The notes below the pieces were generated by a model. It ran no database searches. It had not been told where the DNA came from and saw only the letters and a list, made by a program, of their open reading frames with translations. Shown here in pieces: positions 19,594 to 25,471 of a stretch of 64,000 bases of DNA. This DNA comes from Vitrella brassicaformis CCMP3155 (taxonomy: Eukaryota > Protista > Chromerida): the NCBI GenBank assembly GCA_001179505.1, contig CDMY01000406.1:21424-85423 (forward strand), read 5' to 3'. The translations under genes were made by a program, and so were the position numbers. The stretch's first letter is position 1, and each line of letters begins with the position of its first letter.

Positions 19594-19773
19594 ATTGGAA
19601 GCGTGGGGGGCTGTGAGGTCTGACAACCACCAGGCGAGAAGGGTCAAACGGCCGTCAAACGCCGGATCAAGCTCGCTCTCGCTCCCTGTTGTGCTTGAAT
19701 GCAGCGTCACGGTGAACGTGAACTGGGTGGGACTTGACGGACATAGACCTCACAACGACACCGAGCACAACGA

Positions 19774-20658
19774 ATGAGAAGGACGACAGCACGACGGCCC
19801 CCGAAGGCAGGAAGGGCCTGCCTGACAGCCCTTGTCGTGGCCGTGCTCATGGGGCTCCTCCTTTTCTGGTGCTGGACGGCCTTGCTCGAGCCGGCGCTGC
19901 TTAAGAGGATGCAGAGAGGCGTCTGGTTCGTGTATCTAAAGCCCTCGGCACACCTCTGGGACACTCTGCACGCAGCTGCTGACCCGCAAGGCGGCTTGTG
20001 GGGCTACAAGGCGAACGTCCACGGTGAAATCGACACCTTTATCTCAGCGAGACACCCGCATTATCGCTCTCTCTGGGATACGGCATGCAACTTGGGATAC
20101 CTCCTGACGCGGCTGGCCCATAGTCATCCTAATGCGACGCATTACGGCAGCGATATCAGCCCTTTGATGGTCAACGTCACGCAGAAGAGATGTGATGGCC
20201 ACTGTGTCACCGCTCCCTCCGACCTATTCTCCCTCCAACAGCACGACACACGTCTGCCAAGAGCATTCCCACGGGCGTTCGACTTGGTTATCGTGTCGGA
20301 TGTGCTGTACTATGCCAAGTGGCGCGGCCTCCCCCCGGTACTCTGGCAGTATGGCCTTCTTCCAAGCTGGCTCATCTCTGCTTCCCAGCATTCATTCTGG
20401 GACCGTTTGAGAAGCCTGGCGTGTTCTGAGGTCATTCTATCAAATCACGAGAACAATCCGGCTGTGTTGGGGCTGATGACAGCCATGGGCGCCACCCCCG
20501 TGATGCCCAAGAAGACGATATGGACAGCTAAAGGGACCGCTCCGCGCGAGGCTTGCAATGGGAGTGGCGAGGAGGAGAGAGACGCAGTGGTTGGCTCCTC
20601 TAGTGTGTCTCACATGAAGGGGAAACCACGGGGATTTGCTCTTGCGCCTGGCCGCTGA
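19774..20658 (+). CDS. Intronless membrane-anchored class I SAM-dependent methyltransferase (NodS-like)
   Basis: 294-aa single ORF; N-terminal TM (LTALVVAVLMGLLLFWCW); motif I WDTACNLG, then HYGSDISP and FDLVIVSDVLYY. Confidence 0.7.
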   Translation: MRRTTARRPPKAGRACLTALVVAVLMGLLLFWCWTALLEPALLKRMQRGVWFVYLKPSAHLWDTLHAAADPQGGLWGYKANVHGEIDTFISARHPHYRSLWDTACNLGYLLTRLAHSHPNATHYGSDISPLMVNVTQKRCDGHCVTAPSDLFSLQQHDTRLPRAFPRAFDLVIVSDVLYYAKWRGLPPVLWQYGLLPSWLISASQHSFWDRLRSLACSEVILSNHENNPAVLGLMTAMGATPVMPKKTIWTAKGTAPREACNGSGEEERDAVVGSSSVSHMKGKPRGFALAPGR

Positions 20659-20962
20659 TAAGTGGGTTGTTGCATGCATATCGTTCATGGAACAACACGA
20701 ACACACCACCGACCTGCGTATCAGGGACCATGCTATCTGAGAATTCATGAGCGTCAATGTCGATATGCGTCCGAGCTCTACGTGTCTGATGAAGTATAGA
20801 TGTCCATCGGCAAGGTGTCAGACAAGACAGATGTCCTTCTCCCACACTCAAACCACACCCACACGCACATCGTTGGGAACATTTTTGTTGGCATGCCATG
20901 TGAGGCACCACTCGTCCATCCAAGTTGCCAGCCCCCACAGTGATGGCCAGTGCATACATTCA

Positions 20963-21599
20963 TCATGCCTTTGCCTCATTGTAAAAGGCGTGCGTCCACG
21001 CACAGAGAGACTTGGCGGCCTTGGACTGCCTGCCGACATTGTCAGGGGTGTAGTCGGCATTGTCAATGCACTTCTGCAGCTTGTCCAGCACCGCCGTCGA
21101 TACGTTGTCACTGCTCACGCCCTTCAATCGATCCAAAAACGATGGCTGACACAGACAAGGAGACAGGGACAGACACACAGACAGAGACATCGACAGACAT
21201 TGTGAGATAGATAAGCGATGCGCCGTCTGCAAGGCATACGTCAGAAAGCACTTTCTGGACCACGTGCCAGTCGGTTCCTTCCCCGAGGATGGTGTTCACA
21301 GCCTCCATAGTCATCCTGCATGTGCAATGCGCCAAGGGAAGTGGGAGACAAAAGGAAGACCTTTTGTGTCTTTCGATTACTTGACGAGTGGAGGCGGGAC
21401 GGGGAGACTCTTAAGTTCTGTCACTTGACTCTGAACGTGGGCGCAGAGTAGATGCAGAGGCTGCCCGCAGCGGCTGTCCTTCACCCACCTTGTCAACGCG
21501 AGCAAGGGCGGCTGATGCTGAAGGAAGCAGAAGCAAACGTGGAAAAGGAAACAGAAGCGAGAGGAGGAAACGGCACCGTGCAGCTGTGTGCTTACCCAT
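20963..21599 (-). CDS. Stand-alone dynein heavy-chain stalk microtubule-binding domain (MTBD) mini-protein, ~113 aa, 5 exons
   Basis: Spliced product MASAALARVDKSQVTELKSLPVPPPLVKMTMEAVNTILGEGTDWHVVQKVLSDPSFLDRLKGVSSDNVSTAVLDKLQKCIDNADYTPDNVGRQSKAAKSLCAWTHAFYNEAKA* matches the dynein MTBD consensus (ELKS..PP..VK..MEAV..LG...W...K.L.D..FL..L...D...S.AA.SLC.W). Confidence 0.8.
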
Positions 21600-21717
21600 G
21601 GTGCGATGGGAAGCTGGGAGCCTTCCGGAAGACTGCTTCCGGAAGACTGGGGGCCCCGGGGGCAGAAATGCAAGCTAAGCCGTCTCCACAGAACGGGACA
21701 TCAGGCAGCCTCTAGCG

Positions 21718-22289
21718 ATGACGTCCTCTCTCTCTGGCCCCCCAGAGGCCGGCTCTGTGTCGCTGAGTGCCACTGGGCTGAAGGGCAAGGTCGGCGCCCT
21801 CGCCAACTCGCTGTCGGTCGCCTGCGAAGAACTCCATGGTCAGTCACGGAACACAGCACAGAGAGCCCTTGTCTGCAGAGGGGCCTCACTTCCAATCGCT
21901 CTTGTGTTGTTTGTGGTGCAGTTGACCGCAGCATTCTGGACACCATCAGGGGGGAGAGGGAGCTAAGGCAAGGGGAGCTGCAGGTGCAGCTTGATGAGGC
22001 CAGGCGGTTCTTCCAAGCAGAAATACAGGCATACACACACGAGGACGACACACACGTGACGCACACACTCACAATTCATGTGTGTCCCTGTCTGTCGTGG
22101 TGGATTGGATGACGCATGTAGAGAATGGAGGAGGAGTTTCGCGCACAGGCTCAGCTGCAGAAGACGGAGAACGGCCGCATCCAGCAGTCTGTCACCTCTC
22201 TCAAGGCGGAGAAGACCAGCCTCCACCAGCAGATTCTCTCACTGCAAAGGCGTATCGAGGAAATAGAGGAGGAAGTGGGGCATGACTGA
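21718..22289 (+). CDS. Small coiled-coil protein, 3-4 exons
   Basis: MTSSLSG..ACEELH / VDRSILDTIRGERELRQGELQVQLDEARRFF / MEEEFRAQAQLQKTENGRIQQSVTSLKAEKTSLHQQILSLQRRIEEIEEEVGHD*. Confidence 0.65.
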
Positions 22290-22510
22290 CTGATTGGACG
22301 GGGCAAAGTGTGTGCGGGGGCTTGTGTGTGGACGACCGTCTGAACTTGCCGTGAAATACCTAGGACGATTCGCATGGAGAGAGAGCATCGAGAGCATGAA
22401 CATGTCCTTTAGACACACACGCAGCAGCCCACACGTCTACGTCTGTACGAACACGGGTCGCATCATGAATAGATGCACTGCTCACGCACACACCCATCCC
22501 TCAGCCCTGG

Positions 22511-23868
22511 CTATCGCGGCGGCCCGGCCTCATCTGTCGGGTTGTCCTTCATGCGCTGGATCTCCGCATTCGCCTGCAGCACCCACAAACACATAAAGCC
22601 GCAAACAGTGGCACAAAGGGGCTGGCGCGTGCGTAGCTGACTGGTCTCTTTTTGACCTTCTGGCGGTCCTGATAGCTGAGAGCATCATACTGCTGGCCCG
22701 TCATGGCCTCCCACTGCAGACAGTCAGTGAGAAGGCACACGCACACACACATGCTCAACGGATGCACTGCACGAAGAGGGATATGTGGACGTCTTCAAGA
22801 CCTTTTTGATGTCTCTCATGTTGTGCACTCGCGGCTCGTACGACACCTGCTGCGGCTTCTGTGCCTTGACACGCTCGTTGAAACCCGCCAGCCTGCACAC
22901 ACGCAGACGACCGGCAGACACATCCAGACAATGAAGCTGCATTTCTGTATGTGAGCGGCTTACAGGGCCTGCATATCCGCGTCGTCAGCGATGTTGACTT
23001 TGCCCTTCGGAGGGGGCGCAGCAGCCGCAGCAGCGACGCCCCTCGCACGGCCCCTCTCCCTCTCCCTCTCCCTCTCCCTCTCCCTTCCCCTCTCCTTAGG
23101 CCGCCTCTTGGGCTGGCCACCGGCAGGACCCTCCTCAGATTCGTCTCTGCCACCGCCAGCAGCGCCGCCCTCGTCAGCCCGCCCCCCACCCTCCCCACCT
23201 TCCCCATCCTCCCCGTCCTTGACATCATCATCCTCCGTCCGCCGTTTCTTGGCGCCCTTCCCCTCCCCCTCCCCATTAGGCCTCTTCTGCGCCGCCCTGC
23301 CCCTCTGGCCATCCTTCTTGATGGCCTTCGATGCAGCCGACACACCATGGCCGCCGCCAGCCGGACGCCATGCGGGCCTGGCGGGCTTGTTGGCGCCCTT
23401 TGGTTGCTCGGACGAAGGGTCGCTCACGGTCGGGCCTTTCTGCTGAGCAGCAGGGGCACCAGAAGGCTCAGGAGCAGGCTGGCTCTGTGTGGCGGCGGCA
23501 CCGCCTTTGTCCTTCTCCTTCTCTGCATCCTCAGCATTGCCATTCTCGGTCGCTGCACCAACGGCAGGCTTGACCTCACCATCCACTTGCTCAGGGACGC
23601 TCTCCTGCTGCTGATATTGCTGTGGGTCCGATAGATGCGGATGCTCGCCGCTCTCCTGGCCGTCGGGCTTTGGAAGAGGGCGGGAGGCGTGCGATATGCG
23701 CATTCTTGTGGGAGGGGGTGGCCGTCGCCTCTGTTGCTCATGCAGGGGGTGGGGCTGTCGAAACCACTCGTCGTATGAGGCCGCCTGCTGCTCGCCAACT
23801 GCATCGCCAAGGTCTGCCGCTGGCGGAGGGACGTCAAAATCGAATGGATCTGCCTCCTCGCCAGCCAT
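22511..23868 (-). CDS. Hypothetical charged (K/E/R-rich), low-complexity, probably nuclear protein
   Basis: MAGEEADPFDFDVPP exon; long G/E/K-rich exon with an RE repeat; then LAGFNERVKAQKPQQVSYEPRVHNMRDIKK / WEAMTGQQYDALSYQDRQK / ANAEIQRMKDNP..*. Confidence 0.6.
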
Positions 23869-23915
23869 TGGCCTCAACCACCGACAATAATACTACAGAT
23901 AATCGCCATCAAAAG

Positions 23916-25471
23916 ATGCGTGCGGCATCGCGAAAGGGTGCGAGCTGGAGAAAGGAGGAAGCAGGAGTATTCAGTCCCGACGGTGGCATTGTGGATGTGC
24001 CAAAGATGGACGAGGGAGAGTCCCCGGCGCTTCTGCTTCCCCTGGCAGACGACTTTCATGTGCACCTTCGACAAGATGCCATGATGAAGGCCGTCACGCC
24101 CGCCGTCATCCACGGCGGCTCGGTGAGCATGGCCTCGCCGGCATGCTCACCTTTCATCAGTCCTGGTGTGTCATCTATTTCAGGACAGAGTTGTGGTGAT
24201 GCCAAACACGATACCGCCCATCCGCACGTGCGCAGAGGCAGCTGACTATCGGGCAAAGCTGCAGGCGATTGACCCACGAGTGGACTACCGAATGACTCTC
24301 TATCTCGGTGAGCTCTGCACACGCGCACACGAATGGACGAATCAAACGCCATCAATTCTGCCCGTGTTGCGTGTTTCTCCAGGTCAAGAAGTGTCAGCGG
24401 ATGATCTCCGTGCCAACGCGGATGAGAGCGGCGTTCGTGGCGTCAAGAGCTATCCCCGCGGCGTGACGACCAACAGCGAGGCCGGCATCGAGTCCTACAC
24501 CACCTACTACCCCCTGTTCAGCGAGATGGAGAAGATGGGACTCACACTGCACATCCACGGGGAGGTGGGCAGACGCCCAGATGCTCACGCGGATGTCCAA
24601 TGAGGAGATAGGTGTGTCCGTTGTGCTGCAGGTGCCTGGTGTGTCGGTTTTAACCGCCGAGGCGAGCTTCCTCCCTCAGCTCGAGGAGCTGCATCGGGCA
24701 TTCCCCAGCTTGAAGATCGTAAGCGCGATACGCACTGTGGAGAGAGATTGGCGTAGAAGGCATGTGAATGCGTGTGTCGCTGCTGCTTGTAGGTGCTTGA
24801 GCACGTCTCGACAGCAGCGGCCGTTTTGTTGGTGCGTCGGCTCGGCCCGACTGTAGGTGCCACAGTGACGGCCCACCACCTGGACCTCACCATCGATGAG
24901 GTGGTGGGGTGCTCCCACAACTTCTGCAAGCCTGTGGCCAAGATGAGAGAGGACCGGGAGGCCATCAGACAGGTCGTCATGGATGAAGGTGAGACGTGCT
25001 CGAAGCTGTCTGCTTACACACACGTAATCTTTTCTGTCTCTGGATGCATGTGTCTGTCTGTCTGTCTGTCTGTGTGTGTCAGGCCATCCCCGTTTCTTTC
25101 TCGGCTCCGACTCGGCCCCCCACCCCCGGCACAAGAAGGAGATCGGCATGAAGGCCGCAGCAGGATGCTTCACTTCCCCTTTCCTCCTCGCATACCTCGC
25201 CGACACCTTTGTCTGGGGGTCGAGCAGATACACAGACGATGACACCACCGTCACCAAGCGCCTGCCTGACTTTGTGGGCCGCTTCGGCGCGGAGTTCTTT
25301 GGGGTACCTGTCAAGAGATATGAGGAGGGGAAGCCAGCGGTCGAGCTGAGGAAGAGGGCGTTCACTGTGCCGTCGGTCTGGGGGGAGTCGATACTGGGCA
25401 GCGAAGGGGCGGTGGTGCCCTTCAGGAGTGGGGATGTGCTGCGGTATGAGAGCCGTTTGGTTGGGCTGTGA
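23916..25471 (+). CDS. pyrC: Dihydroorotase, type II (E. coli PyrC-like)
   Basis: DDFHVHLRQD, VVMPNT.PP, MTLYL, KSYPRGVTTNS, LHIHGE, LEHVST, ATVTAHHL, FCKPVAK, FFLGSDSAPH. Start is ATG 23916 or 24006. Confidence 0.95.

What the first reader, a model, noticed from the sequence alone, without database searches (positions are those of the whole stretch)
20963..21599. Stand-alone dynein microtubule-binding domain as a ~113-aa protein
Five in-phase exons encode only the distal CC1, MTBD and start of CC2 of a dynein heavy-chain stalk, with no AAA ring. An in-frame stop lies upstream, and a divergent gene starts ~120 bp away, so no motor can be attached. Intact splice sites across four introns argue against random decay. 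It could decorate microtubules, compete with dynein or lock an affinity state. The adjacent gene encodes a small coiled-coil protein that might supply a stalk-like partner in trans (speculative).
Basis: partly seen in the sequence, partly recalled or inferred. Interest (0 to 1): 0.75.

Follow-up and report, generated by a model that had tools for sequence, protein, structure and literature searches.

The report
Motor-less dynein microtubule-binding domain gene
The alga Vitrella brassicaformis has a small, transcribed, correctly spliced gene that encodes only the microtubule-gripping tip of an inner-arm dynein motor, an old fast-evolving copy that may bind microtubules without any motor, though this is untested.

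Summary
The window is Vitrella brassicaformis CCMP3155. On the minus strand at 21599-20963, five in-phase exons encode the annotated 113-aa protein P0001. It passes Pfam's PF12777 threshold and covers only the stalk tip (profile positions 94-203 of 344).

- **Transcription:** spliced contigs from four runs in three studies confirm three of the four introns. None joins the gene to a larger ORF.
- **Stand-alone status:** an in-frame TAG lies upstream, and no other dynein relic exists in the 64 kb.
- **Fold:** AlphaFold gives a confident six-helix MTBD (pLDDT 92, TM 0.90 to solved MTBDs).
- **Origin:** the DNAH6-type inner-arm heavy chain of alveolates. It is 57% identical to Vitrella's own 4165-aa orthologue, where the MTBD is one exon.
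- **Evolution:** the copy's branch is about 15 times longer. pN (0.29) is well below pS (0.66), there are no indels and the frame is intact. That fits relaxed but real constraint.
- **Doubts:** four conserved lysines are lost, no orthologue was found, and intron 1 and the start codon lack read support.

Best reading: a lineage-specific, expressed, motor-less MTBD protein. Microtubule binding is inferred, not shown. The trans-partner idea for the neighbouring gene has no support. In passing, motor-less proteins with 2-9 tandem MTBDs turned up in several protist lineages.

The parts
21596..21599 (-). Exon 1 of the annotated model: ATG plus G, followed by the donor GTAAG. The context is CACCATGG.
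   Evidence: Sequence and the annotated protein P0001. No RNA contig covers it.
21518..21595 (-). Intron 1 (78 nt, GT..AG). It is in frame and free of stops. If retained, it would add 26 hydrophobic residues.
   Evidence: 62-aa ORF 21411-21599. It is unconfirmed by reads. The X1 contig ends 1 nt past the exon 2 acceptor.
21489..21517 (-). Exon 2, encoding (A)SAALARVDK, the last turns of stalk helix CC1.
   Evidence: The joint 21430 to 21489 is seen in run X1.
21381..21430 (-). Exon 3, encoding SQVTELKSLPVPPPLV(K): helix H1 and the PP motif.
   Evidence: The joint 21314/21315 to 21380/21381 is seen in three runs.
21240..21315 (-). Exon 4, encoding MTMEAVNTILGEGTDWHVVQKVLSD: helices H2 and H3.
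   Evidence: The joints on both sides appear in spliced contigs.
20963..21145 (-). Exon 5, encoding helices H4 to H6 and the first about 7 residues of CC2, then TGA at 20965-20963.
   Evidence: PF12777 gives E 8e-5 on this exon alone. Contigs run unbroken through the stop into the 3' UTR.
21600..21717 (.). 118-bp spacer shared with the divergent gene, a likely bidirectional promoter region. It holds the in-frame upstream TAG at 21677-21675 on the minus strand.
   Evidence: Contigs of the + strand gene begin at 21687.
21718..22289 (+). Divergent neighbour encoding a 131-aa coiled-coil protein. Exons are 21718-21838, 21922-22028 and 22122-22289. The second intron is GC..AG. It is context only and is not shown to be a partner.
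   Evidence: spliced contigs in four runs; only sub-threshold coiled-coil matches.

Best explanation
This is a real, expressed, lineage-specific gene. It arose when the stalk-tip segment of the DNAH6-type single-headed inner-arm dynein heavy chain was copied in an ancestor of Vitrella. It then gained its own promoter (shared head to head with a small coiled-coil gene), its own start and stop codons, and three introns inside the domain.

The 113-aa product folds on its own into the six-helix dynein microtubule-binding domain, with only stubs of the two stalk helices. Without the stalk and the AAA ring, ATP cannot control it. The most likely activity is passive, nucleotide-independent docking at the tubulin intradimer groove that dynein MTBDs use, on axonemal or cortical microtubules. 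Loss of conserved lysines probably weakens or alters that binding.

Shown here: gene structure, transcription and splicing, fold, origin, and constraint weaker than in the parent but still present. Inferred: microtubule binding and any regulatory role.
For: - **Identity and domain:**
- **Transcription:** spliced contigs in 4 runs from 3 studies, with no joint to any other ORF and none across the stop codon.
- **No dynein remnants:** tblastn with three full DNAH6 orthologues finds only the three MTBD exons in the 64 kb.
- **Fold:** AlphaFold pLDDT 92.2 and pTM 0.85, with helices matching CC1 stub, H1-H6 and CC2 stub. Foldseek gives TMq 0.90 and rmsd 1.4-1.5 A to 8i3j and 3err.
- **Origin:** it nests in the alveolate DNAH6-type clade (ultrafast bootstrap 93). 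It is 57% identical to Vitrella's P0186 and 55% to the Chromera and Perkinsus proteins.
- **Not a recent segmental copy:** the parent MTBD lies in one exon, L002 13108-13491, whereas this gene has three introns inside the domain.
- **Constraint:** pN is 0.286 against pS 0.66, a pairwise dN/dS of about 0.23. There are no gaps over 105 aligned residues, and 30 of 49 strongly conserved MTBD positions are kept, including E16, P23, P24, W44, S94, A96, C101 and W103.
Against: - No orthologue was found in any other organism, Chromera included.
- The terminal branch is 1.29 against 0.083 for the parent, so constraint is much relaxed.
- 19 of 49 conserved positions are changed, among them four lysines (K22V, K41G, K48Q, K65S). 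Net charge is 0 against a mean of +1.9.
- In a neutral simulation, 11% of sequences at the same divergence remain free of stops. An open frame alone is therefore weak evidence.
- The start codon exon has no read support, and one run keeps intron 2.
- The runs are labelled RNA only by a guess.
- There is no protein-level or binding evidence.
Confidence: 0.55

Rival explanations
1. It is a transcribed relic. A partial copy of the DNAH6-type gene landed beside an active bidirectional promoter. It is spliced and transcribed but makes no useful protein, and it is drifting towards loss.
For: - It is a singleton in one species.
- Its branch is about 15 times longer than the parent's.
- Four conserved lysines and 19 of 49 conserved positions are lost.
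- 11% of neutral simulations stay open.
- Intron 2 is retained in one run, and the start exon is unverified.
Against: - pN is far below pS, although synonymous sites are near saturation. Neutral drift over that time would have erased the similarity.
- There are no indels over 105 residues, and the three read-confirmed introns are cut exactly at the modelled GT..AG sites.
- The hydrophobic core and signature residues are kept, and the fold is predicted with high confidence.
- Introns gained or kept inside the domain imply a long history as a spliced gene.
Confidence: 0.3
2. The MTBD fold has been put to a new use and binds a partner other than the microtubule lattice. Candidates are a dynein light chain such as LC1, which binds an outer-arm MTBD, or tubulin tails. 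Alternatively, the protein enters the secretory or plastid route if intron 1 is retained and supplies a signal-like peptide.
For: - The changes fall on conserved basic surface positions, while core positions are kept.
- Retained intron 1 stays in frame and would encode MGKHTAARCRFLLSLLFPFPRLLLLPS before ASAALA.
- A solved MTBD-LC1 complex exists among the fold matches, 6l4p.
Against: - The signal-like peptide is what any polypyrimidine tract translates to.
- The X1 contig ends exactly at the exon 2 acceptor, as expected at a splice branch.
- No partner is identified.
- DNAH6-type dyneins are not known to me to bind LC1 (my own knowledge, not tested here).
Confidence: 0.1
3. The 113-aa product is a mis-modelled part of a larger gene, or one piece of a split dynein whose other pieces lie elsewhere and are joined by trans-splicing or by assembly.
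For: - Split dynein genes exist in some fungi (PMC5100056, read).
- The 5' end of the transcript is not covered by the contigs.
Against: - An in-frame TAG lies 26 codons upstream of the ATG.
- The divergent gene's transcripts start within 90 bp.
- Contigs run through the stop codon with no downstream joint.
- There is no dynein-like sequence anywhere else in the 64 kb.
- The stalk stubs are too short to pair with a separate stalk.
- Vitrella already has an intact DNAH6 orthologue with its own MTBD.
Confidence: 0.05

Closest known systems
MTBD of DNAH6-type single-headed inner-arm dynein heavy chains: Vitrella P0186, Chromera P0196, Perkinsus P0163, Chlamydomonas 8glv_Fm, human DNAH6 8j07_g5
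   Same: The six-helix domain is the same, with no H2-H3 flap insertion. Identity is 55-57% to the alveolate orthologues, and E is 1e-22 to 3e-19 to solved chains. It sits phylogenetically inside this clade.
   Different: The tail, linker, AAA1-6, about 100-residue CC1 and CC2 helices and strut are all absent. It is 113 aa against about 4150. It has its own promoter, start, stop and introns. It evolves about 15 times faster, and four conserved lysines are replaced.
Engineered or isolated MTBD constructs used in structural work: SRS-MTBD fusion 3ERR/6RZB, dynein-c MTBD 2RR7, yeast MTBD 6KJN/6KJO, Dictyostelium 3J6P (108 residues modelled)
   Same: The boundaries and fold are nearly the same (TMq 0.81-0.90; P0001 residues 10-106 align to the whole 108-residue chain 3j6p_D). 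These constructs show that the domain is a stable folding unit. Lacey et al. (10.1101/590786) show that it binds at the tubulin intradimer interface.
   Different: Those are laboratory truncations, usually held by a fused coiled coil that fixes the helix registry. This one is a natural gene product with almost no coiled coil, and its binding is untested.
Motor-less proteins with 2-9 tandem MTBD repeats: P0156, P0007, P0008 (Diphylleia), P0298 (Tripos), P0025 (Cyanophora)
   Same: They carry PF12777-type MTBD domains with no AAA domain.
   Different: They have several repeats at a period of about 150-175 residues, in proteins of 300-1900 aa. Each of their domains scores lower to P0001 (84 bits at most) than true DNAH6 MTBDs do (117 bits). 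In the tree P0001 groups with dyneins and not with them.
Impact_N (PF01205) plus MTBD-like domain proteins, an ESM Atlas cluster of 58 members, mostly from oomycetes
   Same: An MTBD-like fold sits outside a dynein (TM 0.85-0.86 by the query).
   Different: The domain is fused to an Impact_N domain in proteins of about 398 aa. Only 14% of members reach PF12777, so they are far more diverged. No direct kinship with P0001 was shown.

Membership tests
Pfam PF12777 (MT, microtubule-binding stalk of dynein motor) | Score above the curated gathering threshold | tested here: met
   The score is 34.8 bits against a cut-off of 24, E 1.2e-8. Only profile positions 94-203 of 344 are matched, which is the MTBD without the long coiled coils.
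Dynein MTBD fold | Six-helix bundle H1-H6 at the junction of CC1 and CC2 | tested here: met
   The AlphaFold model has pLDDT 92.2. Foldseek gives TMq 0.90 and rmsd 1.4-1.6 A to 8i3j, 3err and 5ayh. The model was built from an alignment of dynein MTBDs, so it is not independent of the homology.
Dynein MTBD fold | Signature residues conserved across heavy chains (E16, P23-P24, V27, W44, F56, L60, S94, A96, C101, W103, A106) | tested here: met
   All of these are present. However, 19 of the 49 positions that are at least 80% conserved are changed, including K22V, K41G, K48Q, D64S and K65S.
Dynein heavy chain (motor protein) | Six AAA+ modules and a linker | tested here: not met
   The product is 113 aa with no AAA match. 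tblastn finds no dynein AAA sequence anywhere in the 64-kb window.
Dynein heavy chain (motor protein) | Long antiparallel coiled-coil stalk linking the MTBD to the ring | tested here: not met
   Only about 9 residues precede H1 and about 7 follow H6.
Microtubule-binding protein (functional class) | Binds microtubules | not testable with these tools
   This needs co-sedimentation or microscopy. The loss of conserved lysines makes the outcome uncertain.
Tandem-MTBD motor-less proteins | Two or more MTBD repeats in one chain | tested here: not met
   P0001 has a single domain.
Tandem-MTBD motor-less proteins | Closer kinship to those repeats than to dynein MTBDs | tested here: not met
   The best repeat scores 84 bits against 117 bits for a DNAH6 MTBD. 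The tree places P0001 inside the alveolate DNAH6 clade.
Pseudogene or gene fragment | Frame disruptions, lost splice sites, no transcription, or pN about equal to pS | tested here: not met
   The frame is open, the three read-confirmed introns are cut at the modelled GT..AG sites, spliced contigs are present, and pN is 0.286 against pS 0.66. Recent loss of function cannot be ruled out.

The most novel reading that the evidence does not exclude
Vitrella makes a natural, free-standing dynein MTBD that docks on microtubules without a motor. It could occupy or mark the inner-arm dynein track on the B-tubule or on cortical microtubules. It would then be the smallest member of a broader and, as far as my searches show, undescribed class of motor-less MTBD proteins. 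That class also includes chains of 2-9 tandem MTBDs in dinoflagellates, glaucophytes, CRuMs and other protists.
Probability: 0.35. Interest if true: 0.7.

Novelty: new variant of a known kind. Interest (0 to 1): 0.5.

Why it matters
In the literature I could search, the dynein MTBD appears only as the tip of a motor's stalk, and isolated MTBDs are laboratory constructs. A natural gene that makes just this domain would show that the module can leave the motor and persist. It would also give a ready-made minimal MTBD for asking how the domain behaves with no registry control from the stalk. The tandem-MTBD proteins seen in passing suggest that motor-less use of this domain may be widespread and overlooked. 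The case for function in this single-species gene is still indirect, so its weight depends on simple binding and expression tests.

Tried and rejected
1. **Orthologues of a stand-alone MTBD.** I ran a word-index search with exon 5 and with P0001, and an exhaustive HMMER search. Only P0001 itself came back. The small hits (112-209 aa) sit on short contigs or extend into CC2, and Pfam on 50 single-domain hits showed many with AAA_8 or AAA_9 flanks. I take them for dynein fragments.
2. **Recent segmental duplicate of the Vitrella DNAH6 gene.** Rejected: identity is 57%, synonymous sites are saturated, and the intron structure differs.
3. **Decayed full-length dynein paralogue at this locus.** Rejected: there are no other dynein-like hits in the window.
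4. **Membership of the tandem-MTBD family.** Rejected on per-domain scores and the tree.
5. **Neighbour gene as a stalk-like partner.** It has no significant similarity to the stalk. Its Pfam hits are all sub-threshold and of the coiled-coil kind. These include Ax_dynein_light at E 0.022, which ranks below BRE1, FliD_C and tropomyosin and so counts as noise.
6. **Literature.** Seven searches found no paper on natural motor-less MTBD proteins. Kollmar 2016 does not mention them.
7. **Nup98 or IMPACT fusions noted elsewhere in this genome.** No Nup98-type or Impact_N family appeared in the Pfam tallies of either hit set, so no kinship with P0001 could be tested.
8. **Bacterial-type promoter and terminator scan of the spacer.** Nothing was found, and it is not relevant to a eukaryote.

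The database protein P0001, returned, stood in for it. In the scripts, codons were read exon by exon, and the two codons that straddle introns were left out.

Full report
**What is there.** The window is contig CDMY01000406.1 of Vitrella brassicaformis CCMP3155, a photosynthetic relative of the apicomplexans.

| Exon | Coordinates | Length (nt) |
|---|---|---|
| E1 | 21599-21596 (ATGG) | 4 |
| E2 | 21517-21489 | 29 |
| E3 | 21430-21381 | 50 |
| E4 | 21315-21240 | 76 |
| E5 | 21145-20963 (includes the stop) | 183 |

They sum to 342 nt, and all four introns are GT..AG. The product equals the annotated 113-aa protein P0001.

P0001 passes the Pfam threshold for PF12777 (34.8 bits against 24). It matches only profile positions 94-203 of 344, which is the globular tip without the long coiled coils. 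Against solved structures the best match is residues 2833-2938 of a 4191-aa Chlamydomonas inner-arm heavy chain (E 1e-22). Human, mouse and bovine DNAH6 follow.

**Is it a gene on its own?** An in-frame TAG lies 26 codons upstream of the ATG, at 21677-21675. The ATG has a good context (CACCATGG). A divergent gene starts 118 bp away at 21718.

Contigs of four public runs from three studies were laid on 19700-24200:
- They carry the spliced form, skipping 21146-21239 (four runs), 21315-21379 (three runs) and 21431-21488 (one run).
- The skipped parts have CT..AC ends on the + strand, which are GT..AG on the minus strand.
- No contig joins these exons to anything else.
- Contigs run unbroken from 21145 through the stop codon into the 3' UTR.
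- The neighbour's transcripts start at 21687 and are separate.

Three limits apply. The runs are labelled RNA only by a guess, although the removed introns speak for cDNA. No contig covers 21519-21662, so exon 1 and intron 1 are unverified. One run (X7) keeps intron 2 up to 21482. The X1 contig stops one shared letter past the exon 2 acceptor, and the X2 contig stops two shared letters past the exon 3 acceptor. That is what a graph assembler does at a branch between spliced and unspliced forms. It is circumstantial.

tblastn with three full-length DNAH6 orthologues against all 64 kb found only the three larger MTBD exons at E up to 1. No decayed motor lies next to the gene.

**Fold.** With an alignment of 55 MTBD segments, AlphaFold2 gave mean pLDDT 92.2 and pTM 0.85. 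The helices are 2-7 (CC1 stub), 11-18 (H1), 25-38 (H2), 44-51 (H3), 56-62 (H4), 70-80 (H5), a short turn at 87-91, and 95-112 (H6 plus CC2 stub). Foldseek against PDB returned only dynein MTBDs at the top: 8i3j, 3err, 5ayh and 6rzb, with TM by query 0.86-0.91 and rmsd 1.4-1.9 A. The Atlas's own alignment-free model of this sequence is less confident (pTM 0.74) but has the same fold.

**Origin.** Domain by domain, the closest relatives are true heavy chains of alveolates:
- Perkinsus olseni: 117 bits, 55% identity.
- Colponema: 102 bits.

Vitrella's own DNAH6 orthologue is P0186 (4165 aa, contig CDMY01000288.1). It is 57% identical over residues 2830-2927, with no gaps. Chromera's P0196 is 55% identical.

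In a maximum-likelihood tree of 26 MTBDs, P0001 sits inside the alveolate DNAH6-type clade (ultrafast bootstrap 93). Its terminal branch is 1.29 against 0.083 for P0186. A clade of P0001 with the Vitrella heavy chain is not rejected (p-AU 0.23). The simplest history is therefore a duplication in the Vitrella lineage followed by fast change.

In the parent gene the whole MTBD lies in one exon (L002 13108-13491), whereas the small gene has three introns inside the domain. It is not a recent segmental copy.

**Constraint.** I compared 109 codon pairs, read exon by exon, with the parent:

| Measure | Value |
|---|---|
| pS | 0.66 (near saturation) |
| pN | 0.286 |
| Pairwise dN/dS | about 0.23 |

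The parent branch is short, so most amino-acid change is on the small gene's side. My rough estimate of omega for that lineage is 0.4 or less. That means relaxed but real purifying selection over most of its history.

There are no indels over 105 aligned residues. A substitution-only neutral simulation to the same identity left 11% of sequences free of stops, so the open frame alone is weak evidence.

Of the 49 positions at least 80% conserved among 42 heavy-chain MTBDs, 30 are kept. These include E16, P23, P24, V27, W44, F56, L60, S94, A96, C101, W103 and A106. The other 19 are changed. The changes include four lysines (K22V, K41G, K48Q, K65S), D13Q, D45H, D64S, Y79C and P83A. Net charge is 0 against a mean of +1.9, within the range -3 to +4.

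Position 48 is K in 98% of the heavy chains and lies in H3. From my memory of the mouse sequence it matches R3337, which Lacey et al. name as a tubulin contact (10.1101/590786). I did not verify that mapping here.

**How it most likely works.** The domain is a stable folding unit that binds the tubulin intradimer groove in all dyneins studied. In this protein the stalk is reduced to stubs, so helix sliding and ATP cannot set its affinity. My best reading (0.55) is a small, motor-less microtubule-docking protein, probably with weakened or shifted binding.

The main rival (0.30) is a transcribed, drifting relic beside an active bidirectional promoter. Lesser rivals are a new partner or a new location (0.10) and a mis-modelled or split gene (0.05).

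**The neighbour.** The 131-aa product has exons 21718-21838, 21922-22028 and 22122-22289. It is transcribed and spliced. Its Pfam matches are all sub-threshold and of the generic coiled-coil kind. It has no significant similarity to the stalk. The trans-partner idea stays pure speculation.

**Comparison and novelty.** No paper on natural motor-less MTBD proteins turned up in seven searches. UniRef already labels P0001 automatically as a stalk-domain protein.

The exhaustive search also showed many motor-less proteins with 2-9 tandem MTBDs. An Impact_N plus MTBD-like cluster also exists. The domain therefore does occur outside motors. P0001 is not kin of those proteins and is a separate, minimal case.

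I file it as a new variant of a known kind, of moderate interest. It is a clean and testable oddity, but it is a single-species gene with no functional evidence yet.

Noticed in passing
Proteins P0007-P0156, not in the window (for example P0156, P0007, P0008, P0013, P0025, P0298): A large set of motor-less proteins (300-1900 aa) carries 2-9 tandem dynein MTBD repeats at a period of about 150-175 residues. 62 of 63 scanned match PF12777, and no dynein AAA family is among the 25 most-matched families listed of 56. A few carry a CFAP97, TPR or WD40 domain as well. Sources include Diphylleia rotans, Tripos fusus, Cyanophora paradoxa and MMETSP or metagenome data. I found no paper on them.
   Followed up: partly
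ESM Atlas cluster seen, not in the window: A cluster of 58 Impact_N (PF01205) proteins of about 398 aa, mostly from oomycetes, holds an MTBD-like fold (TM 0.85-0.86 by the query).
   Followed up: no
window 21518-21595, minus strand: Intron 1 of the model is 78 nt, in frame and free of stops. If it were retained, the protein would begin MGKHTAARCRFLLSLLFPFPRLLLLPS followed by ASAALA, which looks like a signal peptide. It may be no more than a translated polypyrimidine tract. No read covers it.
   Followed up: partly
window 21431-21482, minus strand: One run (X7) has a contig that reads from exon 3 on into intron 2 without splicing. In that form the first in-frame ATG would be Met29, which would give an 85-aa product lacking H1.
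   Followed up: no
window 22029-22121, + strand: The second intron of the neighbouring 131-aa gene can only be placed as GC..AG, a minor splice type. Contigs from four runs confirm it.
   Followed up: partly
window 19703-21145 and 22120-22891: Single contigs span the 3' ends of convergent gene pairs: the methyltransferase-like gene at 19849-20658 (+) with the MTBD gene (-), and the 131-aa gene (+) with the 316-aa gene at 22511-23703 (-). Their 3' UTRs therefore overlap or abut.
   Followed up: no
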